DNA of 64,000 nt from Octopus sinensis (Eukaryota), in NCBI RefSeq assembly GCF_006345805.1, contig NW_021835992.1, positions 124,001-188,000 on the forward strand. The letters are read 5' to 3'. Of the stretch, positions 9,282-64,000 are shown one piece after another; positions within the stretch are counted from its first letter, which is position 1, and the number at the start of each line of letters is the position of its first letter. The notes under the pieces are model-generated. The model did not search any database, was not told where the DNA came from, and was given only the letters and a program-made list of their open reading frames with translations. The translations under genes and the position numbers were made by a program.

Positions 9282-9533
9282 TACTTTATTCATTCAATTA
9301 ACTGTGCAAACCAGCAGTCTTAGCAGGCATTGTGAATAACAACCGGGTGTATTCCTTTATTAAGAGTCCTCAGTTTAAAAAGATTAGTGCAAGGGGTTTG
9401 TTTGCAGCATTTTTGTTGTTCTACTTTGTCTTTATCCAATTTACCACCAAACACTGTTTTTTGGCACCTTGAGAGACTTGGCTGTATTTACTACTCTCCC
9501 CTCTAATGCTGGTTTAAATATACAATGAATATA

Positions 9534-37419: not shown

Positions 37420-39025
37420 ATGGCTAAATTAGTATTTAAATATTTCCATTTTTGTATTTTTTATTACTCCTTAGAGATTATATCGCAAAATATATCTCTG
37501 CATACAAAAACTATAACGAGGTAAGCCAAAACCATCACGACTAGGAAATCTCCGAAATCACAAAGTCCTTTGCCCAAAAATTTTCCAATGACGAAAAAAG
37601 GTGCGAACCTCAAATTCTAATCAAAGATATTTGGAGACCAACTTAATGTGGACTTTGAGATCCTTCCGAAAGGAGATCGAAAACTCACAGAACTTGACAG
37701 AAATCATAATGATGCACCAAAGCCAACTCAAAAAAACATCAAAAGAAGTTGTGGAACGCAGAAAAAAAGTAATGGAGTGAAAACTAACATAGATCATGAG
37801 TACACTAAAAAAGCGTCAGGCGGACGTCGACCATTTCCTCAGCCGAGTCCTGAAAGAACACAAGGAAGTTGTGGAAGCACAAGCAAAAAATAAATCAATG
37901 CAACAAAAAATAAGCAGGTTAGTCAACAAATTGCGACCTCTGCAGAGACAGTGTGGCTGCTGCGTCTTTGGCGCATCAAAAAAGAGAAAAGGAGCTCAAA
38001 AAAGTGAGACTATTTGGAGTGATGGGTAGTTAGGGGTAAAGTCAAAAGAGTCTGAAATCAAATTGAATGTACACAAATTAAAATACAATTCCGATCTTAT
38101 TGCTGTAAATCGTCTAATCGAGCTACATGGATCAGAATTAGGAAATTTGATAAATGTATACTTCCAGGAAATAATATGATAGGAATACATCACGGAGGAC
38201 AAACCAGTCGTCGATCAAGTCCGATATTTAGTGGAGTCCATTAAAAAAGCTCACGATTCCAGCACTAAAGAATGTGCACGTCTGATTGGACAACTAAAAG
38301 AGGTTTCCCAATATTTTCCTCACTTTCATAGGAAAATAACTTTTCTAAAAAAATGTTCAACGCCTTTCCGGTGTGTTCCAGCACTCGGAGATTAAATCTC
38401 CACCCACTCTACTCAATTGAGGACATGGACGAGACAAGTGTCAACCGAGTTCTCAGTATCTGGAAGGAGACCATGGACAAAGCCCAACAACGACTCCGAC
38501 ACCTCCAAAAATGTAAGAATCTAACAGGAAACGACAAGGAAGCAATTATCAACACAAAAGTATGACTTTATTTCACATTTTAGCATCAAATCGACATGTG
38601 TGGTGTCGTCATTGATAAATTGTGTTCTTCTAATGAGCCGGATATCCTCCCCGACTTGGATGTCATTTCCGAGCCCAATGTGGAGGTCCCCGAGTTCATC
38701 CCGGACTACAACAGTGTGGTGTCCTCTGACGATGACTTTGACGAGGCCTACCATGCAATCCAAGCCGAATATGATGTATATTTATATTAACATTCCTAAG
38801 TTGCCTATTGAAGAAGTGACTGCAGATAGTTACCGTGTACTTCAGTCGTATAAGGTTGTCGTTTTGTGACATTTCCAGGCTGAGGACGAGAGCAAGATTT
38901 CGTTGGAAAAGGGAGAGGTCGTTAAGTTGTGCGAGCCATTTGACGACACCAAGTGGTGCTTGGTTGTGAAGGATGGGCACAAGGGATACTTCCCTGGACC
39001 ATACTTGCAACTTATCGAGGATTAA
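37420..39025 (+). CDS. Coiled-coil (F-BAR-like) plus C-terminal SH3 protein
   Basis: SH3 after splicing a 24-nt intron: YRVLQSYKAEDESKISLEKGEVVKL..WCLV..KGYFPGPYL*; helical N-terminal region; start and exon structure partly uncertain. Confidence 0.6.
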
Positions 39026-39699
39026 TTAACTTATTAAGAATTATCTTAATGTTCTATTTTGGGATATTTTATGGTTGGAATTAGTTGGGCTTTCATAGTG
39101 CATTTGTCAATAGTAGATCTATTAACTAATTAGACAAATATCTTTTTTCAACTCATTTTTATTACAAGTATCAATGCTGTAAGAATTTACAGCGTTGAAA
39201 AGTAAATACAATCGGTTTTCGACTTGAATCAGACCTCGGGCTAAAGCACTTTAAATGATTTCTGTCAAAAAATTAATGAATCATTTTGAATGAAAACCTT
39301 GATTGAAACTAAATTTATTACTTTTAGGAAAATCAATTATTTTTTACAGTTTCCATATCCGAATGAAGACTTTTCCGTCGGAGGAAGCAATTGGGGATTG
39401 CAGTTATAGACCTACTGAGGCATTAAATGATGTGTTGTCTCGCCTGCCTTCTCGAGTGGTGGACGAGTCTGGGAAATGTCTGGCAATCTCCATGATGATG
39501 TGCATCACATTCAATGCGAAACTCACAACAAATCAACCACCTGATTGCAAGCAGGCATTTGTCTTTTGTGTCGATTTCTTTTCGATTGGGAACACTAAGT
39601 ACTGAGGGATGCTACCTAATTTAGACATTGGCAAAACAATACTTAAGAATTCCTCTGTAGGCAGCATAAAAAATATTTTATGTTATCAGTGATAACAAA

Positions 39700-40982
39700 T
39701 AATCAGGGGGATACAAGCGCTGCCAGCTGGACATATCAAGGGTCGATGCAGGCGAAGTTTCCGAAAGGGAGATCCTGGCAGCGATCTCCCGAAGTAAGAA
39801 CACCGCGGCGGGGCTAGATCGGATCCCTATGTCCATCTTCAAAAAGGCCCCGCCGTTGTTGATCACGGCCTTACAGGTTTTGTTTAGCGGGAGCTTGCGA
39901 CTTGGGATGATTCCTTCCAGGTGGAAAGTGGCTGAGGTAATCCTCATTGGAAAACCTGGGAAGCCTCATGATGTCCCCGGGGGATATAGGCCCATTTCCT
40001 TGCTTCCCGCTATATCTAAAATCCTAGAAAGGATCATGCACCAAAGGCTCCTGGAGGAGCTGATGGTGGCTGACGCCCTCCCGGAGTTCCAATGGGGCTT
40101 CAGGGAGGGTCGTTCATGTGGAGACTGCTTGTGGAAGGTGTCTTCCGAAATGAAGAACGCCCTCCAGAAAAGTGAGTTTGGTATGTTAGTTAGTCTTGAC
40201 ATAGAAAAGGCCTTCGACTCGGTGTGGCACGACGGCCTGCGAAGTTCCCTCGCCACGTGTGGGGTTTCTCCGTGTCTAAGGCGCTGGCTGTCGGGGTTCC
40301 TCGAATCTCGCGGTCAGGTCGTGCGACACCAGGGGGTCTTTTCTAAAGTCGCAACAGTCCTTCGCGGGGTCCCTCAGGGTTCTGTGCTGAGTCCCACACT
40401 GTTTAATATCTTTATGGCCTCTGCGCCTATGCCAGTCAATGCTCGTACTGAAATGGTGATCTATGCAGACGACATTATCCTCTGGGATCAGTCGATGAAA
40501 CCAGAGTGTGCGTGTCGTAGGCTACAGGTTGCTGTGGATGAACTTGTAAACTGGTGTGGGAGTAGGGGTCTAAAGATGTGTGCGGACAAGTGCAGTGTCC
40601 TTAAAGTCTGTAAAAGGACGAGGGGTTACACTAATTTTATCCCTAGGTTATCGCTGGACGGGTCAGCGATCGCTGTAGTTGATCGGACGACTTACTTGGG
40701 CGTGGTCTTCAAGCAGTCAGGTAAGTTCGATGATCACATTGCACGTACTAAAATGCGTGCAATGCAGCGATTAAGCGCGTTGCGTGCTTTCCACTTGAGG
40801 AGAGGTGCCTGGTTCCGTGTGTTCAACGCCATGGTGTTACCCGTGTTAACCTATGGCGTGCACGCTTGGCACTTCTGCGAGGACAGGGAGAAGTACGTTG
40901 ACGCGCTTAAGAAAGTAAGAAGACGAGCCATCCGGCTAGCCTATGGCTTAGGATGGCGTGATGAGCTCTCCAACGCCCAGGA
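39700..40982 (+). mobile_element. Non-LTR RT fragment (I/Jockey/R1 group), truncated at both ends, fused to 28S rDNA
   Basis: WKVAEVILIGKPGK..YRPISLL, QWGFREGRS, LDIEKAFDSVWH, GVPQGSVLSP, YADD, YLGV; ORF stop falls in rDNA sequence. Confidence 0.85.
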
Positions 40983-42240
40983 ATAGGGGCGAAATACTAA
41001 TCGAGCCATCTAGTACAGGGGTCGGCAAAAGCAGGCTCGCGAGCCTTTGAAGGCTCTTTAACTCTTTCGGTAGGCTCTTTCAATTTTTAACTATTTTTTT
41101 TTATAAATGATTTCAATTTTTAACTATTTTTTTTGTTTTGTTAATAACAAAAAATCTTTGCACGTTTAACATTAATTTTTTGTGGTACATCGATATATGC
41201 CTAGCAAGAAAAAAATTAATAAAAAATCGATAATGAGCGACATTTTCAATCAAAATGGACTGAAACTTTTGCATGTACGTCTAATTCAGAACAACTACCG
41301 AAATGTCTCATTTGCCAGGAAACTTTGAATCAAAATAAAAAGTCAAATTTAGAGAGACACTTTAACACAAAACACTCAAATTTCGCCAAAAAATATCCAA
41401 TTGGTGATTCCCGAAAGAAAACTGTGGAAGAACTTACAAAGAATAATCAGTTCGAGAATTCTGCTTTTAAATGTTGGTCTGACAATGCCAGGACTGCAAA
41501 TATTGCCAGTTTTTTATTAAGCCACGAGATCGCAAAAGCCACGAGATCGCCGATGGGGAATTGGTCCCAAATCGCAAAAAGGGAAACAAAATATTTTACA
41601 TTTTCCTAAATTACGCTAATATTTGAAAGAAAATGATCGAACTATAAATAAAACTTATTTTAAAAATGTTCTTTTGTATATGAAGGAATCTTTCAATGAC
41701 AGGTTAAAAATGAATGTTTAAATATAAAAAGGTTTAAGGATTTTAGAAAAGAAAAAGCAACACTATCGTTTGTTATAAACCCTCTACGTGCTAAAGTCAG
41801 CAATTTAAATTAATGCGTCTAATTAATTTAATTTTCTAAAATGAATTTTTAATTATTTTTTAATTAATGTCTATTTAATTTTATGAATTTAAATTTTTGA
41901 CAAGTGGTAAAAGGTGGCTCTTCAATTTTTCGAAATTTCCAAAAATGTTCAAAATTGGCTCTTCTCCAAAAGTATTTGCCGACCCCTGATCTAGTAGCTG
42001 GTTCTCTCCGAAATTTCTCTCAGGATAGCTGGTGTTCGTAAAAAGTTTCATATGTTAAAGCGAATGATTAGAGATCTGTGCTCAGATTGGGTGCATACTA
42101 TTCTCAAACTTTAAACACGTGAGATATGTGGCTCACTTGATTGGAGGCACATATAGAATTAGAGTACCAAGTGGGCCAATTATGGTAATCATGACTGGCG
42201 CTGTGGGATGAACCAAACGTCTAGTTAAGGTGCCGATCGA
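40983..42240 (+). rRNA. 28S (LSU) rRNA fragment / pseudogene interrupted by a hAT
   Basis: Rejoined sequence ATAGGGGCGAAA..CTAATCGAGCCATCTAGTAGCTGGTT..CAGGATAGCTGG..TAAAGCGAATGATTAGAG..CTATTCTCAAACTTTAAA..CTGGCGCTGTGGGATGAACC..GTTAAGGTGCC is conserved LSU core. Confidence 0.9.
41016..41988 (+). mobile_element. Non-autonomous hAT (Buster/SPIN-like), 973 bp
   Basis: TIR CAGGGGTCGGCAAA; 8-bp TSD ATCTAGTA (41008-41015 / 41989-41996); BED-like CLICQE..LERHFNTKH remnant. Confidence 0.95.
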
Positions 42241-44631
42241 CCCCGAACGGGCCTTACACTGCAAACTTTCCCATTAAGGAAGCACGGTATTACTGAATTA
42301 GTAGGAAGACGACTGAGGAAGTGGTCTTACATTGTCGCTGCGGAACAGCTCCCACCTAATAACTTATCACAAAGAATATTAATTAAAATTTAACGAAGTT
42401 GAAAAGCACAAAGAAATTTTGCATGATGTTATAAACAATAAAAATACGACGATCAAAAAAGTAATGAAAAAATTAATGAATTAGAAATTATTATTATTTA
42501 AGCCAAACAAAATCACCGTCTTAACCATTAACTAACACGTTCAGGTGATTCCGACACTTCTCAACAGTCGAGCCATCTTTTCACGATGTTCAGACCGTGA
42601 CCCCACACACTTTCTGTATGTACGGTGAATGGTTTGTGGTCCATTTCCACGATCCCCCCCATTTGCCTCTACGAGAGACTCCAGTGTTATATGGACAATT
42701 TCCCTATCGGTATGGTCCTTCAGTAGGTTGATAGATCTTTCTTGGATTTTTTCGATTTTTAGCCGGTTCGTTGCCGCCAGGTTACAGCCCCAAGCAGCAC
42801 ATGCATAGCCTATTGTTGGCTCGATATACTGCTTGTAAAGGGTCTCTACCCCTGGCGGATAAGTTCTCCCACAGTTCCAAAGGAAGGCTTTTACAAAATT
42901 GATCTTCTTTATACAGGTTGATACGATCGATTCTACGTGAGGTGAAAAACAGAGGAAAGTATCAAGCGTTACTCCCAATATCTTCTGTGTTTTCTTTTGT
43001 GGTATTGGGACTCCATTCAGCGTGACTTCAATAGTTTTCGTCCCCATCTTCCTATTTTTCGTGAATAGAGTGACTGCTGACTTTTCGGAACATGCATGTA
43101 GTCTGTTTTCATATAGCCATCCATATAAGTCGTCCAGTATTCTTTGTAGTCTTTCCTTCGCGTATTCGACATTTACATCCCTAGTTTAATATTGGCAGGA
43201 TTTTTGATAGTTTCCATAAGTTCGGTATAGAGTTCGTGATTAATGACGTGTTATAGATCGTGGTTAAAGCATTTATTGAAACAGGGCCCAAGTGTTTTAG
43301 TAGAATAAGTGGAATTCCATCCGGTCCACATGAGTTTGTTTTCTTCTGATTCGAGATTGTTTCAGACACCTCTTCAGGAAGAAAATAAGTCGTCGGGGGC
43401 CTTTTGGATGGCTTTGATTTTAATCTTGGCTGTGAGTTCATTTTTTATAAGGAATATGACTAATCTTGACACAGTGTTTCATAAAATTGTTTAGATTGAG
43501 CTGGTATGTTTCTGTTTTACGCTCGTCAGGATTCTTCAAGCGTCTCAACATCGTCCACATGGTCGAAATAGAGGCTTGTTTATTCATAGCTCTAGAGATT
43601 CGGCTGAGCTTCTTCCTTTGGACTTGGTTGGTATTATTCGTAATAAGCATGTTTAGAGCCCTGATTCGATCGATGATTCCTTTGGGTCGATACTTTCTTT
43701 TCTTGAGGCTGATTCTTTCTCTAATTAGTTTTTTCGTTCTTGAATCATATTTTGAGCTCCCACTTCTTATACATGCTCTTCTGATAATCAAATTTCTTGA
43801 ACCTATGATAGTTTTGTTGAAGCTTTCCACTGCTCTGTCAAAGGAAGAAAAATTCTCAGGGTGGAAGTTCTGGAGTCTTGAATCAACGTAATTTGCGAAA
43901 GCATTCCAATCTGCGTTTTCGTAATCATAGAAATAAGTTGGTTTCAGTATGGCATGTGGAGAACAGTTCATTCTCATTGAGTGGTGGTCACTTCGGAGAT
44001 CATAGCGGACCGACCACTTGATGATAGGGGAAAGCCGAGGCGAGCAAATTGATAGATCTGGCGATGTCCTCGTGTCCTTGGAGTTGTAGGGTGTCCGAGT
44101 GTTCTTTTTCGGGTTGTTAAGGATTATTAACTTCTGCAATTGCGATACCAAAAGGTTTCCTCTGGCATCGGCAGTCTGATATGGGAATCAAGCGGGATGC
44201 TTCGCGTTCAGGTCTCCGCATAAGAGTAGGTTATCCAATTTATCAAGGCTTGACAGGTCAAAACGATAACCCTTCTTGCATGAACCTGGGGGAGGTACGT
44301 AGACATTGGCGATTTCAAGTCTTCCGTAGGAGGTCATAAGTGAGATTCCAATTATTTCGGAGTTGGAGTCCTTCCTTAGGCTTGCATACGGTAAGGGATT
44401 CTCAAAATATTTTATTCCTCTTTTTATAAGGGTCAGTAGACCCCCGCCATGGTCAGACTTGCGGTCACATCGTAGTGCATCATATCCAGCAAAAAGAGGA
44501 GTAGGGATCCGTTCCGAAAGTTTCGTCTCTTGGAGAAGACAGACATCTATTCGGTTCTCCTCCAAAAAACTGTCAAGGTCCGCCGTCTTTCCTCGAATCC
44601 CGTCAATATTTAGGCATTGTATTGTTAGCTT

Positions 44632-44655
44632 TGGGCCGGGATTCTGTTCCACGTC
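44632..44655 (-). other. 2A-like ribosomal skipping motif (LLLLTSGDVEQNPGP)
   Basis: DxExNPG/P consensus immediately before the APE domain. Confidence 0.9.
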
Positions 44656-44743
44656 ACCTGAGGTCAACAGCAACAATCGATGGTAAGTGCCAACGTTGAG
44701 AAGATGCCGTGCAGGGGGAAGTCTTCTGGTTGGCGGGGAGCAA

Positions 44744-44811
44744 ATGGTTCTCTTTAGATACCGTTTAGGACTGTATCCGGCGCCACCAGAAAAGGTAAAC
44801 CACATGACGCG
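44744..44811 (-). ncRNA. Candidate HDV-like pseudoknot at the 5' end of LINE A
   Basis: Manual pairing: P1 GCGTC/GGCGC, P2 GTGGTTT/GAACCAT, P3 ACC/GGT, P4 GATAC/GTATC; covaries with LINE B. Confidence 0.45.
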
Positions 44812-47800
44812 CGCTAAATAATTGTATTCACCGTACATACAGAAAGTGTGTGGGGCCACGGTCTGAACATCGTGAAAAGATGGCTCGACTGTTGAGAAGT
44901 GTCGGAATCACCTAAACGTGTTAGTTAATGGTTAAGACGGTGATTTTGTTTGGCTTAAATAATAATAATTAGAAGATTTAGACAAAAAATAAGACAACGA
45001 AAATCGTTAAGTCCCAGCGGCAAGGACGCAGTGTGCGTTGCCCCGAACAATGGCCAGGCCGATGCGCTGGCGGAACCAGAGGCCCTCTCTCGTGTCCTTG
45101 AGCCTCCTCCCGATGGACTGCCCGACCTCTTTGAGGAACGAGTCAGTCTCCTTCCCCGCAGCTCCAGCGGTTTAGATTTAGTTTTAGATATTCCTCAAAG
45201 TTCGTTAAAAACTTTTAGTGTCTCAGAAAAGTTTAAATTGTGGTTTACTTTGCAAACAAAGAACCTTTTCACATCTTCCAAAGTGTTTATGTGGCGATAA
45301 TACAATAAGTTGTGCTTTTTGCTCTATAGTTTAATAGATTTCTATTCTGTTTTTTCACTTGATTTTGATTAATTAATAAATCATTATTTTGTAAAACATT
45401 TTTTTGAAATAATCAGTCAATTTCAAATTTTTCTTATTTCTTAAATCTTTTCCAAGTTGAAATCTAAGCTTATCTTGAATTTTTTTATTATGAAATGTTC
45501 AAATTAGGTCCAAAAAAATAGAGAAGTTAACTAAATTAGATGAGTCGCCGAGCGGATGGACAGGCAATTTCCACGTAGTATCGCGAACGATATCCGCTGA
45601 AAAAGCCAGCTCGTTCTTGAATTTTTTTGCACCTTCTCTTTAAGAAGAAATTTGTAGACACTTTGCAATTTTAATTTTTGTTTCAATAGAAATCTTGGAA
45701 TGCATTACAAAAAGATAAGTATCAAGTGTTCAAAAATAATATGTCTTAAAACAGGGGTGTCAAACTCATTTCGCTTTGAGGGCCGCATTTTGTAACAATT
45801 TCGTTTCGAGGGCCGCATTTATAATAATTTCTCATTAAGGGAATATTGATTCTGATATTTATTATGATAAATAACCAAAATAAGAGAAACTAAATTATTC
45901 AATCATCGCCCCTTAATTTTGGTGAGAGCTGCTTCCATAGGATTGACATCTTTTTTTAGATACAATTTTTGATATGTCAGGCTGAGCTATTCGTGTAGTA
46001 CCGACTTTTATTAAAGAGAATAAATGTTCATCAGTTAGTCCTGTTCTTTGAGCAGTTTTTGTGCTTTTCATAAATGAAAAAAGCTGTTCACACATATATG
46101 TCGAACCAAACATAGCAATGATTCTTGTTGCAAACTTTTTAAAGTTTTTAAACTTTCCAGGAAGATATAAAAAGAAAGCAGGTATTCCAACCTCCAAATA
46201 TTTAGCTTAAAGTATAGAATCTGATTGGATTTCGAATAGTTACATTTGTAAACTTTTATCTGCATTGGAAACATTAAAAGAGAATGGTGATGCGAATAAT
46301 AAAAATTGTTGTTCAAAAGACCAAAAATCATTAAATCTTTCTTGAAATTCCTTTAACAACGATTCTAGTTGTTTTTCATACTGAGAAAAATTCATTACAT
46401 TATGTGCATCAACAGTACTCCTGATCCAAGATTGGCTTTTCATTTCGTCTGTGTTTTGCCATTTCATCTCCATAAATAAAATTATTTCCGATCTCAACAA
46501 ATAAAATCTTTTAACAAATTTGTGAAGTAATAACCAGAGGACTGGAGTATAAAAAGGAATGTCGCTGAACTGATTATTAATATCTGTCAACAGTTTACTA
46601 AACTGCCGGTGGTTGAGGGGATGACCTCTGATATAGTTTACTGTTTTCGTGACCAAACAAATGGTATTTTCCATTTTTAATATCTTTGAGCACAAATATT
46701 GCTGATGAATAATATAATGAAAATGAGCAAATGATGACCCGGGATTTACCTTTTCTATTTCAGCTCGCAATTTAGCGGCAACGGCAGCATGTCGTCCAAC
46801 CATATTCGAAGCACCATCAGTGCATAAACATACAATCTTCTTCAAATCAAACCCATATTTAAAGAGAATTTGTAGTAGTTTTATAATTTCTATAAAAATA
46901 TCTTTACTTGTAAGTATCGTGCATTGGTACCAGTTCGAGAAATTCTTTATAAATATTAAAATCTGAATCACAGGCTCTAAAAAAGATTGCTAATCGTGCA
47001 ATTCCAACGACGTCGACTGTTTCATCGATTGCAATTGAAAAATATTCGAATTTTAACAAATCAGACTTTAATTAGTGTTTCAAATTCAATGCCATTTCAT
47101 TAATGTGTTCGGCAACAGTATTTCTTGTTAATGAAATATCTTTGAACAAGTGGGCGTCGTCTGGACAAATAATATTCGCTGTTTTTACAAGGCATTGCTT
47201 AATGCAGGTGTTCTCAACCGGGGGCGAATCGCCCCCCTAGGGACGAAAATTTTGTAAAGGGGGGCGATAATTTTGTACAGGGGGGCGATAATATATTTAA
47301 TAAAATATTCGAATTTGAAAATAAGAAAACGATCAAATCGTTATTCACAAAGCCAGTACATGATGGTTATTAAACATTTATTTATATGTAGTTGTGGGTG
47401 CGCACATCGCTTCTTATAAAATTGCTGAAATTATTGCGAAAACTTCCAGTTCTCATACTATCGCAGAAAATGTAATAATTCCATCACTGGAAGTAATAAT
47501 ATTGGATGTAATGCATCAAGATGCTTCTAAAATTATTAAAAGTCTACCTCTTACCTCTTAGCAATGATTCGATTCGTCGAAGAATTGATGAAATGGGTGA
47601 CAATGTAAAGGAAATCCTTATTGAAAGACTGAAGCGAAGTAAGTTTTCATTACAACTTGATGAAAGCGTCATTGTAGATAGTAAAGCTGTTTTAATGGGA
47701 TTTGTGAGGTTATTTTCGAAGTTTTAATAAAATTTAGGTATTTCGATAATGAATGTGTATTAAATGAGGATTTATTGTTTGTCGAATTATTGGAAACCTG

Positions 47801-49104
47801 TACAACTGGAATGTCAATATATTCCGTAGTAAGTAAAAGGGTTTTTTGAAACAAATGGAATATTATTTGAAAATTTGGTTTCATGTGCGACTGATGGTGC
47901 TATGTCAATGGTTGGAAGATATAAGGGATTTGTTGCTCTTATTAAAAAAGATTATCCATGGGTCATTACGGTTCATTGTATTTTACATCGCCATCAACTG
48001 GTATCGAAGATTATATGTCCTGATTTACATCAATCTTTGAATATTGTAATTAAAACAATTAACAGAATAAAACACGAAGCAAATGTGATCGTCTTTTTAG
48101 AAAGTTTTGTAAGGATGCTTGTGAAGATTTTATTCGACTTTTATTACACACGGAAGTAAGATGGCTTTCAAAAGGAAATGCTTTAGAAAGATTTGTTAAT
48201 CTTTACGATGCAATAGTCGCATTTTTGCAGACTGAAGAAGACTTGGTTTTGGCAGAAGAGATAATTTCACGAAAAAATGATATATTCTAAATTTTGGCAA
48301 TCAAAAGATCTACAAATGAAATTTCCAAATTTATGGAAGGAAATGAGTAATGTACTATTGACATTCCCCACCACTTATTTAGTTGAAAGTGGATTTAGTT
48401 TTGTCAATCATAATACACCAGCGGTTCTCAACCGTGGTCCCCAGAAAATTTTTAGTGGTCCCCAGGAATTTTCGAAAAATAAAAATATATTAAAGTTAAA
48501 ACTCATTGTACAATTAAGAATAAATCAAAAACATTGAAATTAATCTGATTTGATTAGCGTGGTTTATCATTCTATTTATGGTTAACAAGAATCGTCGTCT
48601 TTGGTCGGATTCTTACGTACAATTTGGATTCACTAAATTCATTGCCCCAAATAATGAAATAAAGGCAAAATGCATGATTTGCCATAAAATTTTGGGAAAC
48701 AATTTACTGAAACCTTCTCAACTTAGGCGCCACAAAGAGTCTGTACACCCAGAAAATTCTTCCTCACATGAATATTTTAAAGTCAAAAGAACGAAGTTTG
48801 ATTCACAGCCAAAGCTTGAGTGGTTTAATAAATATCAAGATAAACCGAGATTAGAAGCATCATATGCTGTAATTTTAATTTATATCTAAAACAAATAGGT
48901 CTCAATGATTATCGCAAAAAACAAAGCTGCACATAATTCTGGTGAAAAATTAATCAAACCAGCGGCTCTTGAAATGGCTCGAATTTTGTTTGGTCCGGAT
49001 GCAGTTACCAAACTTAAGGACATACCATTATCCAACGATTCAATTTCCCGTAGAATTTCAGAATTGTCATCTGATATCCTGAAGCAATTAATTAAAAGAA
49101 TCAA

Positions 49105-52100
49105 AAAACTATATCCCGTTTTAAAACCAATAATAAATTAATAGTTAATCAGAAACTAAGCAGATCTCACTCCAGCTCGCTGATATCCACTCTCCTTCTC
49201 TTGGAAGAAGAGTCTACTTCCAGCTGCCTCTTACTCCCCACTACCACATCTGATTCAACCATTGCATCTTCTTTAGCATTCATTGGGTCGTCTTCATTTT
49301 TGCATGCCATCTCCACATACCGGTTGGAAGCAGAAGCGTATTCTTCACCAGATACCTTCATTCCGTGCTTGTGTTCGATCATCATACTCTCGAGCGTTCT
49401 TTTCAGTACAACGGATTGGATGTATGTCCTCGTTCCTGCTTCAATAGATAGTTTCTTCATATAATTTTTAAAGCATTTCGAGACAACTCCATCCCATGTC
49501 ATAACCACAGGAATTATTTTTACTTGACAGCTATACAGAAGCGAAAGCTCACTTGCCAATAGGTCATACTTGTGACACTTTTCAACCTCCACTTGCTTGA
49601 GGCGATCCTGTGAAGTAATACCCACTTCAATTAGATTTATTTCGTTTCTGACTTTGTCGTGGACAAAGATATCTGGCTTGTTATATTCTACTTTTGTTTC
49701 GGTGAGGATTGTACAATCAACCCTGATTTCAACTTTTCCCGTCGACAGTGTTGACTGAACAGAATGTCCCTTCAATCGTCTTGCTTTTTTGAGTCCATAC
49801 ATTCGGCACAAGTTAAGGTGAATACACTTCACAACTTCGTTGTGTCTCCGGAGATAATCACTGTTGAGCATTTTACCACACTGAGTAGCCATGTGGTCAA
49901 CAGTTTTCTTGCTTTTCTTACAATGATTGCATAATGAGTCAGCGGATGTAAAGAACAAGTTTCGATCTTGCAGAAGACAATACAATGCTTCACTTCGTGG
50001 CCCATTATTTCCATTAGATAGCCATTCTGAGGATGCAGGTAAATCAACATTAGGTTCATCCACACATTTGAAAAGCACAGAATGTAGTGCTTTAGAACTA
50101 ATTTTCTTTTGTAAATATTGTATCTGACTGGACTTTAGAGACTCCATAGTAATACTCTTCTTATCAATAATTGCATATTTGGAGGATAGAAATCCTGCGA
50201 TCATAGCCAAATGCCATTTATTCATTTTAATTACACGCAGAATCCCCGCCCTCCGTAAGCATATAGTTGACATATTTTCCAGACTCGTAAGGAACTGAAA
50301 GAGCATTAGTTCACTTTTGAAAGCAACTGATGAAAGCCCTCTTCCAAGAGCCTTCCGGTTTAAATACAGTCTCTCTTTATTTGCAGGTTTGAGATGTAAT
50401 CTGAGCGACGTAAGCAATTGCCGTATTTGTCTGTCAATATCATCAAATTCAGAAGGTTCAATATTGATTAGCCCAATATAATAATTATATAGTGACAATG
50501 CATATTCATTTATAGCACGAAACAGATTCACAGAGTTGAGTTTTGTTTTCGATAGCATAGTTATCCTCTTCTTAACATTCTCAAAGATAGAGTCCATAAC
50601 TCTATTCTTAAGAACATTGCTTCCACCATCTTCAAGTACACCCAAATACCGATATCCATTGATTCCGTCAATAGTCTTACAACATGATAATGATTCCAAA
50701 TTAGACGCTGATTTTTCTGAATTCATCTCCAAACCAACAATTTTAAAAAATCCGTTAACAGCTTCCATCATTTTGAGTAAAGTGTCTTGTTTGAGAGCAA
50801 ATATTTTTAGATCGTCAATAAATAGCAAATGATTAGTAGAATATGTTAACATATTGGGATCTTCCTGGTTAATTTCAAGTTTTGGAAACACGGAATTAAG
50901 GATCCTGCTTAGAGGATCTAATACCATAACAAATAGTAAAGGAGACAATGAGTCTCCCTGTAAAATTCCTCGGTTTAACTTCACTGATCCAATTCTTCTA
51001 CCTTCCATATGCAGCTTTACTGCCCACTTCTTAACTACGCTCTTCACAAAGTTTACGATCCAAAGCGGGATTCCAGAACAATCCAAAACGTGAAACAAAA
51101 AATCATGATCAACTGAGTCATATGCTTTCTTCACATCGACCCAAGCAGAATAAAGGCCATTCCCGTACTCCTTGTTCAAACATTGGTTAATGAGAGCTTG
51201 CTCCTTGGCGCCTTGACAATACTTCCTCGTTCCAAGTTGGTTGTCTGAAATTAGGCCAAATGCCTCGACAAAATCAGCCAGTTTAACATTAACACATTTG
51301 GTGACAAGTTTATACAATGTCGGCATACACGTTATAGGACGTAAGTCCTTCGGGGTCTCACAATCATCTTTTTTAGGAATCAAATATGTTATTCCAGTGT
51401 AAAACCAACTTTCAGGCATGTACTCTCCATTAATTATTCGGGTTATCTCGTGACACAGAAATCCATGTAATGATTCCATCTTCTTAATGAAAAAGTTATA
51501 TATCCCATCACATCCACATGCCTTCCAGTCAGGAAGATACTTAATAACATTTCCAAAAAACTCTTCCGTAAACTCTGGAAGCATATGTTCAGCACAAGTA
51601 GTTCGTTTTCCAACAACGTCATAAGATTGAGGCCTCCCATTTCTCTCGCTCCAGACTTTTTGCCAAAAAGAGACACATTCTTCATCATCAAATCCATACA
51701 GCGTCACTTCCTCTTTCTTTGTTAAATCTCGATAGAATCTTTTTCGATTTAATTCAAAGCACTGATTATCCTTACGAAATTGCTTCCTTGAATTATGAAC
51801 TTCTATTTTCTTATTGTTAATCCTAATCAGGTCTTGCAATAATATCTGAATCCTCGACAGCTCACCTTTCTTAGTTTTCTTATACCCATAGCGACAGAGA
51901 ACATCCATTACCTTTTGCTTTTCAGATGGAGGTAGTGTTTGATTGGAATGGGACTTAACAATTTCCAATTCTGCAGATAATTTTGAAATTTTCTTTTCAA
52001 TATTTTCTACCCATGTGCTCTGTGCTTTGTCTCTCATGGTTAGAGATAAATACGCACATTGAGCAGCATATAGAATATCAGAAATGCTATTGATATCATT

Positions 52101-52733
52101 AGGATGATTATCTTTCGTAATATAATATATCGCCGAATTCAATCCTGTCAATATATCAGTTTTCAAATATTTATTTTGAATTTTTGGAGTTGGTTTACGT
52201 GAATCCCTTGGAATCGATTCAATATTCTTAATTTGTATATTCAACTCTTCTAGACACTTTCTAAAAGTGGAAATTTCTGAGCTCTCAAGAAATTGCTTCT
52301 GATGGCAATTGCTTCCATAATTATTATCCACTCTCATTGGTTTAACCATTCCTTTGAGTTGACTGAGACTTGCACTCTTCGAGAATTTTGAATTAAACTT
52401 CTCACGGATAAGGTTCCATCCACCTCTTGGTATCCTCCCAATTCTTTGCTTCGTGGCATAAACAATCTGAGGCACCCACTCAGCTTCAGAAACACAAATA
52501 GCATCATCGATAATGGCCAAAAGGGAATGCAAGTTAGTTGGGATAGTAGGATTCCCAGCAATTGGATTGTCATGAATACTAGTCCTTGTGCTGTTATCCA
52601 GCCCCAGAGACGACACTCCTGCACTTGTTATGTTATTTTTATCCTTTTTCGCAGGAAGGCCCCTAGGATTCGATTTCCTCATATCATTAGGAACGGACAT
52701 GCACAACACCACAACAACTATTCTATCGCTTTT
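49105..52733 (-). mobile_element. Apparently intact R4/Dong-clade non-LTR retrotransposon, nest level 4
   Basis: 10-bp TSD AAAGAATCAA (49095-49104 / 52734-52743); removing it restores the hAT frame LIKRINKSKCRISIQLDESTD. Confidence 0.92.
49167..52712 (-). CDS. RT plus CCHC plus restriction-like endonuclease polyprotein (1181 aa)
   Basis: GAKEQAL, DVKKAYDSV, GILQGDSLSP, NHLLFIDDLK, RLYL..GRGL, CNHCKK..HMATQC, RRHN, KPD..IEVG..KYD; first ATG at 52700. Confidence 0.93.
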   Translation of the reverse strand: MVLCMSVPNDMRKSNPRGLPAKKDKNNITSAGVSSLGLDNSTRTSIHDNPIAGNPTIPTNLHSLLAIIDDAICVSEAEWVPQIVYATKQRIGRIPRGGWNLIREKFNSKFSKSASLSQLKGMVKPMRVDNNYGSNCHQKQFLESSEISTFRKCLEELNIQIKNIESIPRDSRKPTPKIQNKYLKTDILTGLNSAIYYITKDNHPNDINSISDILYAAQCAYLSLTMRDKAQSTWVENIEKKISKLSAELEIVKSHSNQTLPPSEKQKVMDVLCRYGYKKTKKGELSRIQILLQDLIRINNKKIEVHNSRKQFRKDNQCFELNRKRFYRDLTKKEEVTLYGFDDEECVSFWQKVWSERNGRPQSYDVVGKRTTCAEHMLPEFTEEFFGNVIKYLPDWKACGCDGIYNFFIKKMESLHGFLCHEITRIINGEYMPESWFYTGITYLIPKKDDCETPKDLRPITCMPTLYKLVTKCVNVKLADFVEAFGLISDNQLGTRKYCQGAKEQALINQCLNKEYGNGLYSAWVDVKKAYDSVDHDFLFHVLDCSGIPLWIVNFVKSVVKKWAVKLHMEGRRIGSVKLNRGILQGDSLSPLLFVMVLDPLSRILNSVFPKLEINQEDPNMLTYSTNHLLFIDDLKIFALKQDTLLKMMEAVNGFFKIVGLEMNSEKSASNLESLSCCKTIDGINGYRYLGVLEDGGSNVLKNRVMDSIFENVKKRITMLSKTKLNSVNLFRAINEYALSLYNYYIGLINIEPSEFDDIDRQIRQLLTSLRLHLKPANKERLYLNRKALGRGLSSVAFKSELMLFQFLTSLENMSTICLRRAGILRVIKMNKWHLAMIAGFLSSKYAIIDKKSITMESLKSSQIQYLQKKISSKALHSVLFKCVDEPNVDLPASSEWLSNGNNGPRSEALYCLLQDRNLFFTSADSLCNHCKKSKKTVDHMATQCGKMLNSDYLRRHNEVVKCIHLNLCRMYGLKKARRLKGHSVQSTLSTGKVEIRVDCTILTETKVEYNKPDIFVHDKVRNEINLIEVGITSQDRLKQVEVEKCHKYDLLASELSLLYSCQVKIIPVVMTWDGVVSKCFKNYMKKLSIEAGTRTYIQSVVLKRTLESMMIEHKHGMKVSGEEYASASNRYVEMACKNEDDPMNAKEDAMVESDVVVGSKRQLEVDSSSKRRRVDISELE

Positions 52734-59437: not shown

Positions 59438-61364
59438 TCAACTACCATGAAGATCTTTAAGCCTACTGATCTCATCCGCAGTGATCAGCCTGAATAAGGG
59501 AACAGCCTCGCCAAGTTGATGTCCTTTTCTCAAAAGAGGACGGAAATGAGTGGGGGCACACAAAGTGGAAATATCATCGGGGAGGTTGAGTTGACGAGCC
59601 AAACTGGCTGCTGACTGGGGAATGAAGGGAAAGATGAGATAAGCCAACAAACAGGCCAAATTGCACATGAGTGATGTACAGTTATATGCCTCACTCCTAC
59701 TCAATTATTGGCAATCAGTAGACTTGGTTGAACTGGTCTTTACTTTAACCCACGGCTGTTGTGACTGGATAAAAGCATTGCCGAGACGGGAAATGGACAG
59801 GACATCGTAAATGGAAGCCACAAACCTGATAATAGAGACACACATACTTGCAATTGTTCATATTAGTGTGATAACTCTCCACCAAAGGACCAATCTGAGC
59901 TAAAAGTTCAGCCATCTCCTCTGCGACCACCACACTGCCCACAACCGAGTCAAAGAACTTGTTGCAAAACACAATAGCCCTACACATGTTCAAAACTAGG
60001 GACCGGTTGATAAAATTGCCAAGATTGTTGACCAAATGACTGTTAATACACGTCAACATATCATCCCAGTGGAATGTGGAGTCCTAATGTTACAAAAGTG
60101 GTAAAACATGTCCTTCGGGGCGATTGATGAGGAGGTAGAATCTCCAATAATCGGAAGGAATCCCCGAATTTTTTATATCCAAGCCAAAAACTCCGATTCC
60201 CCGTGACTTGGAAAACTTGGTGGTCTCGTAGTTTAAATATTCAGTGGCACTAATGCGAGACACGAGCGTGTAGTCCTCTCCTGTGCCCAGAAGGGAGGAA
60301 GGGAAGACCACCGAGTGGAAAGGCACGTTATCTTTAGCCATGAAATTGGTCAGTTGGACATGTGCTGGATTCTTCCACCACAATTGCCAATCAGGACAGT
60401 AATTGGCTGTGATCGAAATGTAGCCGATTGGGGCGTCAAACCAAACGTAAAAAACTTTGTCTGTGAAGCCTTCTAAGGGGATGGGAGTCCCCCATGTGAG
60501 GTCTCGGCTTATACAACGACTTTTGAGTCCTTCCTTTATCCAGGCGGCCGAGATGGCGACTGCGTTGGCACTCCACAGCCCTTTGGAGGTGGCCATCCAC
60601 TCTTCTAGTTGTGGTTGTAACTAAAAATTAGAAAAATGACAAACTGAGGACAAATCTAGAAATAAGTGATTAGAACTGCGGATTATTGGACTGGCACTAC
60701 AATTCTTGCATTTGGGGGATATCAGTTCAGTGGCCTTGATTAGTCGGCCACATGAATCACATTGGTCCCCTCGAGCGTCATTATATTGACAGTTCGGACA
60801 CTGTCCCTCGACATATCGATCAGCAAGGAACATGTTGCATGTTGTGCAGTACAGTTGATCGACCCACTGGGAGGAAATATAGCCATTCTGATTGAGTTGT
60901 GAGAATATTTGTTGAGTAATTCTAAAATGGATAAAAGCACTGTACTCTGTTTGCAAGGGAGTGGTTGTCCTTCCGAAAATGTCAAAACTGATGTCAATCC
61001 AGTCGTACACTTCTGAGTGGAGTTTGTGGTATTTTTCACATATTTGGGAGGGGGAGAGTCCTTCCTGACGAGCCTTGGTCTCGGTGGCTGTTCCGTACTC
61101 GTCTGTGCCACAAATAAAGAGAGTGGGGTAGTCACTCATGCGGCAATATCTTGGATGTGGATTTTGGTCTACCTTGCGTACATATCAGCACTGAGGACAC
61201 ACCCCACGATGTTGCCGAGGTGGGGAATGTTGTTGACGTAGGGAAGGGCACTGCATATTAATTTGTTGGGTGTGTCTGGCTGGGGAAGGCTGCAGTGCTT
61301 ATACACGTCTATACATTGGCTTTTCTCTAATAGTTCTCTTTTTGTAAAATATTTGCTCCAACAT
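59438..61364 (-). CDS. MARS1: Cytosolic methionyl-tRNA synthetase (catalytic core only)
   Basis: [14 protein letters not shown] (HIGH), CGTDEYGT, Zn knuckles, [16 protein letters not shown] (KMSKS), NNLGNFINR; several 24-25 nt introns. Confidence 0.95.
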
Positions 61365-62042
61365 CGCCCACACGTGCAGTAATTATAACAATTTTTTATT
61401 ATATATTAAAACATCTACTTTCTACAATTGGCGGCCATGTAAATGCAGGGAATCTTATTAGACCATTATTAAACATTTAGTTGGTGTCCTTGTATGAGCG
61501 TATGGATCGTTTAGGATAGTCAACTTATTGAGTACGGAAAGGATATATTCGCCACGAATGTCGGCCGGTTGAGACCGGAGCCAGAGCGGATGCTTGGCAT
61601 TTAGGTCGCCGCATAGCAGCAAGTCCTTCAGTCCGCCGAGTTTCAATAAGTTGGGTGTGTATTTTGAGATAAAAGAGGTCGTCGAGCTTTGCGGTGGGAC
61701 ATATACATTGCATAATGTAAAATGTCTTGAGGGTGAGAGAGGAACTTCTATGGAGATTTGTTCAAGGATAGGATCGTCTTGGCACAGGGAGGAAATGAAT
61801 GTTGTAACGTCGGTGAACACAAGCCCATCCTTGACAATTGTCAATAGTCCTCCACCAAGACATCTCGTCCGGTCCTTTCGCAGTACACTGTAGCCAGGGA
61901 ACCGAGGTGTTGGGGATGACGCGGAGAGTTTAGACTCCTGGATGAGGGCAATGTCCACTTTTAATCGGGATAGAAGGGAGCGTAGCTCCAGGACCTTGCT
62001 TCGTACTCCATTGATATTCAGTTGTAGGATAGTCAGAGAATC

Positions 62043-62066
62043 GGGCCCCGGATTCAGTTCCACGTC
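62043..62066 (-). other. 2A-like motif (FLHLAGDVELNPGP)
   Basis: DxExNPG/P consensus immediately before APE (LTILQLNING). Confidence 0.9.
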
Positions 62067-62144
62067 GCCAGCCAGATGTAGGAAAGAGAAAGGGAAGTTG
62101 GAAGGCAACCCCTCCCAAAATCGTGAAGGGGGGGAGAAGGTAGA

Positions 62145-62210
62145 ACGGTTCTTTTTCATGCAGAATATGCACTGGGCGCCACCACAACAACAGGTGAACC
62201 GCATGCCGCC
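62145..62210 (-). ncRNA. Candidate HDV-like pseudoknot at the 5' end of LINE B
   Basis: P1 GGCGGC/GGCGCC (one mismatch), P2 GCGGTTC/GAACCGT, P3 ACC/GGT, P4 TGCA/TGCA; no obvious catalytic C in J4/2. Confidence 0.4.
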
Positions 62211-64000
62211 ACGTAAATTAATTCTTTAATCACCACGGACCGTACTATCAAGACTATATAACGACTCCATCAACTTACGTACGATACCTAATATATGGAA
62301 AAACTCCCTAATTACGCCAATCCTAAAGCCTGGGAAACCAAAGGATGCCCCCTCTTCATACCGCCCAATCTCAATAACTTGTATCTTATCGAAAGTACTG
62401 GAAAAGCTCGTATTAATGCGAATCTCTCCTGTCCTACAACTGCCAGAATTCCAGCACGGTTTTAGACCAGACCGTTCCACAACGACCCACTTGTGTTCTG
62501 TCTCCCAGTTTATCACTGAGGGTTTTAACATGGGAACACACCTACGGACGGCCTTAGTATCTATTGATATACAAAAGGCTTTTGATTCTGTCCCGAGGAA
62601 ACTCCTAACGCGGAAGATATTTGATTCGAACTTACATCCGAACATCAAACTGTGGTTGGAAAATTTCTTAACTGGCCGTCGCGGAAGGGTCCGTATCGAC
62701 AATACTACTTCAAGATCAAGACTACTGCCCAATGGTGTCCCACAAGGCTCCCCTTTATCTCCTCTCCTTTTTAACCTATTTCTACATGACCTACCCACTA
62801 CTAATGACCCAGACATAATGTTCTTATCCTATGCGGACGACCTGATTATCGCTGCAAGAGATAAATCTCCTTCTGTGGCTGTCGCAATGGTCCAGTCACA
62901 CCTCAACCGTGTATGTGATTGGCTATCTGCAAACATGTTGTGTGTGTCTGCATCCAAATCCCAATTCACCCTCTTTACTACTGACAGAAGATTCAAGAAT
63001 GGGCTGGAACTATTCATTGGAGACAAACCTATTCCCTCTTCGCGTACCCAGAAGATCCTTGGCGTGGTTTTCGACTCCTTAATGACGTTCTCAAGTCACG
63101 TAGAGGAGGCCCTAGCTAAAGGTCTGCGGAAGTGGAACGTCTTGAAAGCTCTGTTAAAGAAGAGTCCCCTCCCCCTGAAAGATTGTGTCAGCAAAGTCTA
63201 CCAACAAGTGATTGCCCCGACGGTTGAGTATGCCTGCTCAGCCTGGAGGTTTGCTATTGCTTGTTCGAAAGCGGAACGTTTGAACTCACTCAGAAGGAAG
63301 ATTATGCTCCACACTGACACCTCAGTTGGCAGTCTTGCTTCCGAGGAGGCGACGCAGAAGAATGGACAGGGTTTCCTACGTTTCTGCAAGGAACTGGGAA
63401 ACCCACTCAAGGAAAAGGTGGCACATGCAGAGGAATTTCGGTCGGTTATAAAGAAATGCACTCCAATTGAGTTCCTCTGCAGAAGGAAGAGAAGGCTTTT
63501 CCGGATTACGGTCGGGTCATCAGAAGATCATGTAAGGAAAGTACGGCTGTGGTTGGAGGCAGGGATCACCTAATTAGTTAGTTCTGACCTATCTTTCTCG
63601 GTGATCTTGGAGTTAATAAATAAATAATAAATAAATAAACATTTAGTCGTACGTAATCTCGTCCCTCTGCCGATCCTTTGCTTAGCTGAATCAGTTCGGT
63701 TGAACAATTTGGGCGACAGGAATGGTTGGGATACCAAGCCAGTCCTCCACAAGACGAGGTATCAATCACTTGTTAGTCACTCCACCGAAACATGTATATT
63801 CCAGGATTCTACAGTTGACGAATCATTCGCCTTGTAGGCCTTCTCTTTTAGTGGGCCACCTCATTCCGAATGATCTGCCGATATAGTCCACAATCACTGT
63901 TCTCTTCTACATGTAATGTCCTGCAAACAACCCCAGTCTCTCAATTTTCGACCTTCGCAACAACACGTGTCCCCTCTAAAACAGGAGTTGTCGTTATTGG

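What the first reader, a model, noticed from the sequence alone, without database searches (positions are those of the whole stretch)
61470..63647. Twin-priming-type 5' inversion in a non-L1 LINE
Seen: one 12-bp TSD (TAAACATTTAGT) brackets an inverted 5' arm (pseudoknot-2A-APE, minus, 62210 to 61482) and a forward RT-plus-tail arm (62230-63635). The APE-RT linker is missing (about 0.8 kb by comparison with LINE A) and about 19 nt of AT-rich sequence lies at the junction. Established: this geometry is the twin-priming signature known mainly from mammalian L1. Inference: both family members in this window used second-strand priming, so it may be a regular pathway for this family.
Basis: partly seen in the sequence, partly recalled or inferred. 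Interest (0 to 1): 0.8.

Follow-up and report, generated by a model that had tools for sequence, protein, structure and literature searches.

The report
Half-inverted LINE insertion in octopus
A young jumping-gene (LINE) copy in an octopus genome has its front part flipped relative to its back part inside one pair of insertion scars. This is the "twin-priming" pattern known mainly from mammalian L1, here seen in an unrelated LINE type; it is one clear example, not a demonstrated rule.

Summary
An exact 12-bp duplication (TAAACATTTAGT, 61470-81 and 63636-47) brackets two arms. One is inverted (62217 to 61482, minus): 5' terminus, leader, 2A and a C-terminally cut APE. The other is forward (about 62230 to 63635): RT, 3' stem-loop and a (TAAA)n tail.

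The window is Octopus sinensis contig VCDQ01002782.1:124001-188000. Against an intact sister-family copy (refA), the inverted arm ends at nt 730 and the forward arm starts near nt 1540, so about 809 nt are missing. The inverted arm reaches the clade's conserved 5' terminus. The unassigned junction is 0-12 nt, not 19.

An arm with no tail, a composite-wide TSD, open ORFs and no breakpoint repeats favour one event in which both nicked strands primed cDNA synthesis (confidence 0.8).

The 0.8-kb gap is larger than most L1 cases. Microhomology at the internal priming site, and one RNA versus two, cannot be tested without more copies.

"A regular pathway for this family" is not established. LINE A is a sister family (46-52% aa) with a different variant, a 145-nt inverted copy of its own 3' end ("dual priming" type). 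Four other LINE A-family copies have no inverted arm.

Verdict: a new member of a known kind, of moderate interest.

The parts
61470..61481 (+). 5' copy of the target-site duplication TAAACATTTAGT. Its 3' end is the proposed top-strand primer.
   Evidence: Exact match to 63636-63647; shuffle test 17/20000.
61482..62042 (-). Inverted arm, APE endonuclease domain, cut at its C-terminal end at 61482. This equals refA nt 730, after ...HTRTP.
   Evidence: Pfam Exo_endo_phos profile 1-182/225 and Exo_endo_phos_2. 46% aa identity to refA, ending at nt 730.
62043..62066 (-). 2A ribosome-skipping motif DVELNPGP at the end of a 46-aa leader.
   Evidence: Translation. LINE A has GDVEQNPGP at the same place. 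2A is known in single-ORF Rex1/Crack/L2/L2A/CR1 LINEs (PMC3708506).
62130..62217 (-). 5' terminus and leader of the element. The ATG is at 62204 and the conserved terminus is TTTACGTGGCGGCATG. Helices lie in the order P1-P2-P3-P3'-P1'-P4-P2', with P1 crossing P2.
   Evidence: Alignment with the 5' ends of four LINE A-family copies. Helices listed; P2 compensatory pair. No Rfam match.
62218..62229 (.). Inversion junction: 12 nt, TTAATTCTTTAA, that cannot be assigned. It may be extra nucleotides or the first bases of the forward arm.
   Evidence: No homology in the protein frame. 17/19-nt resemblance of 62218-62239 to refA 1545-1562.
62230..63573 (+). Forward arm coding part: open frame with a complete RT domain and C-terminal region, stop at 63571-73. 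It starts at about refA nt 1540.
   Evidence: Pfam RVT_1 2-204/205; 52% aa identity to refA from nt 1555.
63564..63606 (+). 3' stem-loop spanning the stop codon (GATCACC ... GGTGATC).
   Evidence: RNAalifold with LINE A copies: 10 pairs, one compensatory A-U to G-C change.
63613..63635 (+). Microsatellite-like tail, TTAATAAATAAATAATAAATAAA. It runs into the TAAA of the TSD.
   Evidence: Sequence.
63636..63647 (+). 3' copy of the target-site duplication.
42486..44970 (-). Comparator 'LINE A', a sister family. The body is 44825 to 42486, with a 533-nt internal RT deletion. A 145-nt inverted copy of its own 3' end lies at 44826-44970. A candidate 8-bp TSD, TTCTAATT, flanks the whole.
   Evidence: Inverted repeat 145 nt with 2 mismatches. 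Mapping on refA. Flanks read.

Best explanation
This is the product of one target-primed reverse transcription event of a young, single-ORF, 2A-bearing, CR1/L2-like LINE in Octopus sinensis. Both 3' ends of the staggered target cut served as primers.

Inferred steps, with what is shown for each:
1. The element's endonuclease nicked the bottom strand at 5'-TGTTTA^ATAATG-3'. The primer end TTTA-3' can pair with the UAAA tail unit. cDNA 1 ran from the tail to about position 1540 of the element. Shown: the tail abuts the 3' TSD and shares a 4-nt overlap with it.
2. The top strand was cut 12 nt away. Its 3' end (...CATTTAGT-3') started a second cDNA at an internal point of a LINE RNA, near position 730 inside the APE coding region. 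That cDNA ran off the RNA's 5' end. Shown: antisense APE sequence starts directly after the 5' TSD and ends at the clade's conserved 5' terminus.
3. The two cDNA 3' ends were joined, with 0-12 unassigned nucleotides, and filled in. About 0.8 kb (the APE C-terminus and linker) was copied by neither cDNA. Inferred.

Whether both cDNAs used one RNA (classical twin priming) or two RNAs is open.

The copy is dead on arrival, because the ORF is split and partly missing. It lies next to methionyl-tRNA synthetase exons, which are on the minus strand.
For: - An exact 12-bp TSD encloses both arms; chance is about 1e-3 or less.
- The orientation and order of the arms match the prediction for top-strand priming.
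- The inverted arm has no RT, 3' UTR or tail, so it cannot be a TPRT insertion of its own.
- The inverted arm ends within a few nt of the 5' terminus defined independently by four LINE A-family copies. This is expected for a run-off cDNA and unlikely for a random breakpoint.
- Both arms have the LINE A family as nearest relative at comparable distance: 46% in the APE and 52% in the RT. The next relatives are at 42% and 41-46%. Base composition is similar: GC 0.49 and 0.47.
- Both arms are stop-free over 248 and 447 codons and the TSD is perfect, which indicates a recent single event.
- No inverted or direct repeat longer than 19 nt lies at the breakpoints.
- The 12-bp TSD falls in the 10-20 bp range reported for 5'-inverted L1 inserts (PMC4245944; PMC11702581).
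- A sister-family copy 17 kb away also carries an inverted arm inside a TSD.
Against: - The gap between the two internal breakpoints is about 809 nt. In induced L1 events it was 1-10 bp (PMC11702581). In human L1 long-read data 46% lay within 20 bp (PMC12016303).
- Microhomology between the TSD 3' end and the RNA at the internal start cannot be examined, because the element's own sequence beyond position 730 is unknown. 71% of L1 cases have 2 bp or more. The sister family gives no match there.
- LINEs with a 3' stem-loop and microsatellite tail are thought to start reverse transcription by recognising their 3' end. ZfL2-1 gave no 5' inversions in culture. Internal initiation is therefore not expected a priori.
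- This is one copy in one assembly. No reads, empty site or second family member could be checked.
Confidence: 0.8

Rival explanations
1. Two-template version. The top-strand cDNA was copied from a second RNA molecule of the same family, not from the RNA used by the bottom strand. The two extended ends were then ligated.
For: The 0.8-kb gap between breakpoints is unlike the close spacing expected when the second primer anneals just ahead of the first RT. Opposite-orientation inserts from two different RNAs are documented for L1 (PMC11702581). LINE A's duplicated 145-nt 3' end is most simply explained by a second RNA ('dual priming', PMC2837659).
Against: The arms do not overlap and are in collinear order, as a single template predicts. 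Nothing distinguishes the arms by sequence or composition.
Confidence: 0.3
2. Secondary copy. The inversion arose earlier in a source locus. The already rearranged element was transcribed from outside, mobilised in trans and 5'-truncated at 61482. The TSD then marks an ordinary insertion.
For: It would give the same TSD-bracketed structure. It cannot be excluded without a genome-wide search.
Against: It needs an extra event and a read-through transcript. No second copy was found in the window or in the five O. sinensis loci examined. It still requires a twin-priming-type origin for the source.
Confidence: 0.07
3. Post-insertion DNA rearrangement. A full-length copy inserted normally. Later its first 730 nt were inverted and the next 0.8 kb deleted.
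For: Inversion-deletions occur. The arms are collinear parts of one element.
Against: One breakpoint would have to fall exactly at the element/TSD boundary and the other at the element's 5' terminus. No inverted repeats at the breakpoints could mediate it. Open ORFs and a perfect TSD leave little time for it.
Confidence: 0.05
4. Two independent insertions plus a deletion, or an assembly error. The 12-bp repeat would then be a coincidence.
For: The region is rich in transposable elements. The TSD word also occurs once more in the window, at 6123-6134.
Against: The sequence flanking the forward arm alone (TTAATTCTTTAA versus TAAACATTTAGT) shows no duplication. The inverted arm lacks a tail. The chance of the 12-mer is about 1e-3 or less. 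A mis-join would not create a TSD or place the element's 5' terminus at the junction. There are no Ns in the region.
Confidence: 0.04

Closest known systems
Twin priming / 5'-inverted L1 insertions (Ostertag & Kazazian 2001, cited)
   Same: One TSD around two arms of opposite orientation. The forward arm carries the tail. The inverted arm is made of more 5' element sequence, and its element-3' end abuts the 5' TSD. The TSD is 10-20 bp. The junction has few or no extra bases.
   Different: The element is not L1. It is a single-ORF 2A LINE with a 3' stem-loop and a (TAAA)n tail. The gap between internal breakpoints is about 0.8 kb, not a few bp. The inverted cDNA reaches the RNA 5' terminus. Microhomology at the internal start is untested.
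5' inversion of zebrafish Nimb-2_DR in DT40 cells (Yamaguchi et al. 2014, PMC4245944)
   Same: A non-L1 LINE with about 12-bp TSDs that produced a 5'-inverted insert.
   Different: That was a single insert in a heterologous cell-culture assay. This is a natural germline copy in a cephalopod, from a different clade. ZfL2-1 (5-bp TSD) gave none in that study.
'Dual priming' and poly(T)-headed L1 inserts (Meyer et al. 2010, PMC2837659); opposite-orientation two-RNA inserts (PMC11702581)
   Same: LINE A (44970-42486) has an inverted copy of its own tail end at its 5' side within a TSD. This is what tail priming on both nicks predicts.
   Different: It applies to LINE A, not to the element in the finding, whose inverted arm starts internally and has no tail.
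2A-bearing single-ORF APE-type LINEs of the Rex1/Crack/L2/L2A/CR1 clades (Odon et al. 2013, PMC3708506)
   Same: An N-terminal leader ending in D(V)E(x)NPGP directly before the APE domain, a single ORF and a microsatellite-like tail.
   Different: The clade was not assigned by phylogeny here. The nearest named relatives are unannotated Octopus sinensis proteins.

Membership tests
Twin-priming-type 5'-inverted LINE insertion | A single target-site duplication encloses both arms | tested here: met
   12/12 exact at 61470-81 and 63636-47; 17/20000 shuffles.
Twin-priming-type 5'-inverted LINE insertion | The forward arm ends in the element's 3' tail next to the 3' TSD | tested here: met
   RT ORF, stop codon, 3' stem-loop and (TAAA)n tail run into 63636.
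Twin-priming-type 5'-inverted LINE insertion | The inverted arm consists of element sequence lying 5' of the forward arm, with its element-3' end abutting the 5' TSD | tested here: met
   The inverted arm is refA 1-730 and the forward arm runs from refA ~1540 to the end. The APE C-terminal side is at 61482.
Twin-priming-type 5'-inverted LINE insertion | Both arms derive from one element family or template | tested here: inconclusive
   The arms share the same nearest relative at similar distance (46% and 52%) and have similar composition. No family consensus is available. One RNA versus two is undecidable.
Twin-priming-type 5'-inverted LINE insertion | Typical but not defining: internal breakpoints close together (a few bp of deletion or duplication) | tested here: not met
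   The gap is about 809 nt. L1 comparison: 1-10 bp in 32/32 induced events and within 20 bp in 46% of human polymorphic or somatic events.
Twin-priming-type 5'-inverted LINE insertion | Microhomology between the top-strand 3' end and the RNA at the internal start | not testable with these tools
   The element's own sequence beyond position 730 is absent from this copy and no other copy was reachable.
APE-type single-ORF 2A LINE (CR1/L2/Rex1/Crack group) | APE and RT domains of non-LTR type | tested here: met
   Pfam Exo_endo_phos, Exo_endo_phos_2 and RVT_1.
APE-type single-ORF 2A LINE (CR1/L2/Rex1/Crack group) | 2A motif D(V/I)ExNPGP upstream of the APE, in frame | tested here: met
   GDVELNPGP at aa 46-54 of the minus-strand ORF. 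It is also present in LINE A, refA and LINE C.
APE-type single-ORF 2A LINE (CR1/L2/Rex1/Crack group) | Placement in one of those clades by RT phylogeny | not tested
   No reference clade sequences were available. Database hits carry no clade names.
   Helices in that order are found in the element, LINE A and LINE C, with different sequences in P1 and P4 and one compensatory pair in P2. There are only three families. The element's P1 has an internal mismatch.
   No such Rfam hit at E<=1 or E<=10.
   J4/2 is GAAAAA in the element and TAAAGA in LINE A, with no C. Genomic copies start 8-10 nt upstream of P1.

The most novel reading that the evidence does not exclude
In this cephalopod clade of 2A LINEs with 3' stem-loops, reverse transcription primed from the second (top-strand) nick may be a frequent, element-encoded part of integration and not an occasional accident. 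It would start either at the tail of a second RNA (LINE A) or internally (this element). A shared first-strand stop near position 1540 would mark an RNA break or pause site. That would extend twin or dual priming beyond L1 to 'stringent' LINEs and provide a natural system in which dual priming, only postulated for L1, can be seen directly.
Probability: 0.15. Interest if true: 0.55.

Novelty: new member of a known kind. Interest (0 to 1): 0.35.

Why it matters
In the papers I could search, 5' inversions are described almost only for mammalian L1. In cell-culture tests an L2-clade element gave none and a Nimb element gave one (PMC4245944). It has been argued that inversions depend on features of L1 and on host factors.

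A clean natural case in a cephalopod CR1/L2-like LINE, plus a tail-primed variant in a sister family nearby, shows that second-nick priming is not restricted to L1 or to vertebrate hosts. It fits the idea that a 3' overhang of 10 nt or more is what permits it.

It is also practical for annotation. Inverted half-copies of this kind would be miscalled as two separate fragments.

Tried and rejected
- Other copies of the element in the window: none at nucleotide level.
- Protein database searches with the RT arm and the APE arm: the best hits outside the LINE A family are 46% identical, so there is no second member of the element's own family. An exact look-up of its RT ORF is not on record.
- Host identification through the MetRS exon: uninformative, at most 62% identity. 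The host was instead identified through LINE A.
- HDV-like or any other Rfam family at the 5' leader: no hit. MAFFT did not align the P1 3' strands of the three families, so no formal pair count was made.
- A suspected third inversion at 50.8-51.3 kb is an artefact. The region is one continuous 1181-aa RT ORF.
- The first idea that about 15 of the 19 junction bases align with LINE A's 5' end was corrected. Only TTTAG/TTTAC onward is shared by all four LINE A-family copies.
- Ostertag & Kazazian 2001 is not held in the library, so L1 features are taken from papers that cite it.
- Literature searches for twin priming outside L1 gave only the Nimb-2_DR case.

Full report
**1. What is at the coordinates**

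- TSD: the 12-mer TAAACATTTAGT occurs exactly at 61470-61481 and 63636-63647.
- Inverted arm: directly after the left copy, the minus strand carries an uninterrupted ORF (62204 to 61458, 248 codons). It reads as a 46-aa leader, GDVELNPGP (2A), and then an APE endonuclease domain. The domain matches Pfam Exo_endo_phos only over profile positions 1-182 of 225, so it is cut off at the TSD.
- Forward arm: from 62230 the plus strand is open for 447 codons, with a complete RVT_1 domain, up to the stop at 63571-73. A short 3' UTR and a (TAAA)n-like tail follow and run into the right TSD copy.
- Chance: a shared exact word of 12 nt or more between the two 90-nt boundary zones arose in 17 of 20000 shuffles. 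Because TAAA is also the tail unit, the duplicated target is 8-12 bp.
- A third copy of the word at 6123-6134 (minus strand) is unrelated.

**2. Origin of the window**

- The APE arm's only database hit was an Octopus sinensis protein. That protein is the LINE A family.
- Fetching its paralogues gave locus L007, which is 12618/12618 identical to window 38188-50805.
- The window is therefore O. sinensis GCA_006345805.1, contig VCDQ01002782.1, positions 124001-188000.
- The insertion lies just upstream, in gene orientation, of methionyl-tRNA synthetase exons on the minus strand at 60621-61306.

**3. Reference for the missing part**

- O. sinensis loci L003, L005 and L006 hold 2.87-kb copies of the LINE A family ('refA'), which are 99% alike.
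- The layout is collinear: 5' terminus TTTAGCGCGCGTCATG, leader-2A-APE-linker-RT, a stem-loop across the stop codon, and a (TAA)n tail.
- The element's APE arm is 46% identical in amino acids to refA and ends at refA nt 730.
- Its RT arm is 52% identical, aligned from refA nt 1555 (arm residue 6), so the arm starts near nt 1540.
- About 809 nt are therefore absent: the APE C-terminus and the linker. Two more distant full-length relatives from ENA sample ERZ25073846 give 860-896 nt.
- No relative is closer to either arm.
- The arms have similar base composition: GC 0.49 and 0.47, GC3 0.53 and 0.49. This is consistent with one source family but does not prove it.

**4. The junction**

- Four LINE A-family copies with different upstream flanks all begin at TTTAGCGCGCGTCATG.
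- The element's homologue, TTTACGTGGCGGCATG, begins at 62217. The inverted arm therefore reaches the clade's 5' terminus, as a run-off cDNA would.
- Only 62218-62229 (TTAATTCTTTAA) remains unassigned. It may be extra nucleotides.
- Alternatively, 62218-62239 matches refA 1545-1562 at 17 of 19 nt with one 3-nt gap. That would start the forward arm at about 62218 and leave no filler.
- The protein-level alignment favours 62230. This is unresolved. Either way the forward arm starts within about 6 nt of refA 1540.

**5. Mechanism**

- On the plus strand the order is: TSD, antisense element from position ~730 down to 1, junction, sense element from ~1540 to the tail, TSD. This is the product expected if two things happened.
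- First, the bottom-strand nick (5'-TGTTTA^ATAATG-3', whose TTTA-3' end can pair with the UAAA tail unit) primed cDNA 1 at the tail.
- Second, the top-strand 3' end (...CATTTAGT-3') primed cDNA 2 internally on LINE RNA.
- The two cDNA ends were then joined. The geometry is shown by the sequence; the enzymology is inferred.
- The 12-bp TSD fits reports that 5'-inverted inserts have discrete TSDs of 10-20 bp. Those reports also suggest that a 5-nt overhang, as in ZfL2-1, may be too short for a second initiation (PMC4245944; PMC11702581).

**6. Alternatives**

- The inverted arm has no RT, 3' UTR or tail, so it is not an independent TPRT insertion.
- The forward arm alone has no TSD of its own.
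- No repeats at the breakpoints could mediate recombination; the longest nearby are 14-19 nt and lie elsewhere.
- A later inversion-deletion would need breakpoints exactly at the TSD boundary and at the element's 5' terminus.
- A mis-assembly would not make a TSD.
- Two readings remain open: retrotransposition of an already rearranged source copy, and the use of two RNA molecules.

**7. What departs from the L1 picture**

- The two internal breakpoints are about 0.8 kb apart.
- In induced L1 events they were 1-10 bp apart (22 deletions and 10 duplications among 32).
- In human long-read data 46% were within 20 bp.
- Microhomology at the internal start is present in 71% of L1 cases. It cannot be checked here, because the element's sequence beyond position 730 is unknown.

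**8. The 'regular pathway' inference**

- LINE A (minus strand, 44970-42486) carries a 145-nt inverted copy of its own 3' end, including the tail, directly before its 5' terminus. The copy has 2 mismatches. The whole lies inside a candidate 8-bp TSD, TTCTAATT.
- The plain full-length copies L003 and L006 lack the inverted piece, so it is not part of the family's structure.
- This is a tail-primed variant. It is what Meyer et al. called 'dual priming', and it is akin to the two-RNA opposite-orientation inserts seen with L1.
- LINE A belongs to a sister family, not the element's own.
- Of five LINE A-family copies examined, one has an inverted arm. L004 is simply 5'-truncated. L005 is full-length plus a tandem 3' fragment.
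- The sample is tiny, and four of the five copies were picked because they encode annotated proteins. The inference is therefore neither confirmed nor refuted.

**9. The 'pseudoknot'**

- In the element, LINE A and a third family (LINE C, L003 about 1185-1060, minus strand), the leader can form helices in the order P1-P2-P3-P3'-P1'-P4-P2', with P1 crossing P2.
- P4 and P1 differ in sequence between families. P2 has one compensatory pair.
- The topology resembles HDV-like ribozymes, which I recall from my own knowledge are known at the 5' ends of some LINEs. Several tests argue against calling it one.
- No Rfam model matches, even at E<=10.
- J4/2 lacks a C in the element and in LINE A.
- Genomic copies start 8-10 nt upstream of P1.
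- I treat it as a conserved 5' RNA fold of unknown role.

**10. Verdict**

- The twin-priming-type interpretation is the best explanation (0.8).
- In the held literature the only non-L1 precedent is one Nimb-2_DR insert in cultured cells.
- This is a new member of a known kind, of moderate interest. The generalisation needs a genome-wide census, which these tools cannot run.

Noticed in passing
window 42486-44970 (minus strand): LINE A has a 145-nt inverted copy of its own 3' end, including the tail (44826-44970, 2 mismatches), directly 5' of its 5' terminus. The whole lies within a candidate 8-bp TSD, TTCTAATT. This is the 'dual priming' structure postulated for L1. LINE A also has a 533-nt internal RT deletion (refA 1638-2169).
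   Followed up: partly
L004 9583 (refA 1539) and window ~62218-62230 (refA ~1540-1545): A plain 5'-truncated LINE A-family copy starts within about 6 nt of the position where the finding's forward arm starts. For two random points in 2.9 kb the chance is roughly 0.4%. This may mark a first-strand pause or an RNA break site.
   Followed up: no
L005 5988-9214: A full-length LINE A-family copy is followed, after about 10 nt, by a 343-nt 3' fragment of a different subfamily in the same orientation. Both lie inside one 12-nt TSD with one mismatch (TAATATAATTG... / TAACATAATTG...). It looks like a template jump between two RNAs in one event.
   Followed up: partly
window 42007-42306 (+): A 300-nt fragment of eukaryotic 28S rRNA (Rfam LSU_rRNA_eukarya, 174 bits, model positions 960-1386 with an internal gap) lies about 180 nt beyond LINE A's 3' end. 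Its origin was not examined.
   Followed up: no
window 62130-62217 (-), 44728-44818 (-); L003 1060-1185 (-): A conserved 5' leader fold with crossing helices (HDV-like helix order) includes the start codon. It is seen in three 2A-LINE families, has no Rfam match, and lacks a C in J4/2 in two of the three.
   Followed up: partly
window 63564-63606 (+), 42511-42556 (-): A 3' stem-loop spans the stop codon (GATCACC/GGTGATC versus AATCACC/GGTGATT), with one compensatory change between the two families. It is a probable RT recognition element.
   Followed up: partly
window 49167-52712 (-): An intact 1181-aa ORF has an RVT_1 domain and no recognisable endonuclease domain in Pfam. It is annotated in O. 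sinensis as an 1101-aa gene product. This is another, possibly active, retroelement.
   Followed up: no
window 9532-11939: A 2.4-kb stretch is 99.9% identical to L005 1026-3435, from a different contig, and contains an RT fragment. It is a very young repeat family.
   Followed up: no
window 39829-40986 (+): A 385-aa open RT ORF belongs to an unrelated LINE family (29% identical to the finding's RT). It starts at about the same RT-N-terminal position as the finding's forward arm.
   Followed up: no
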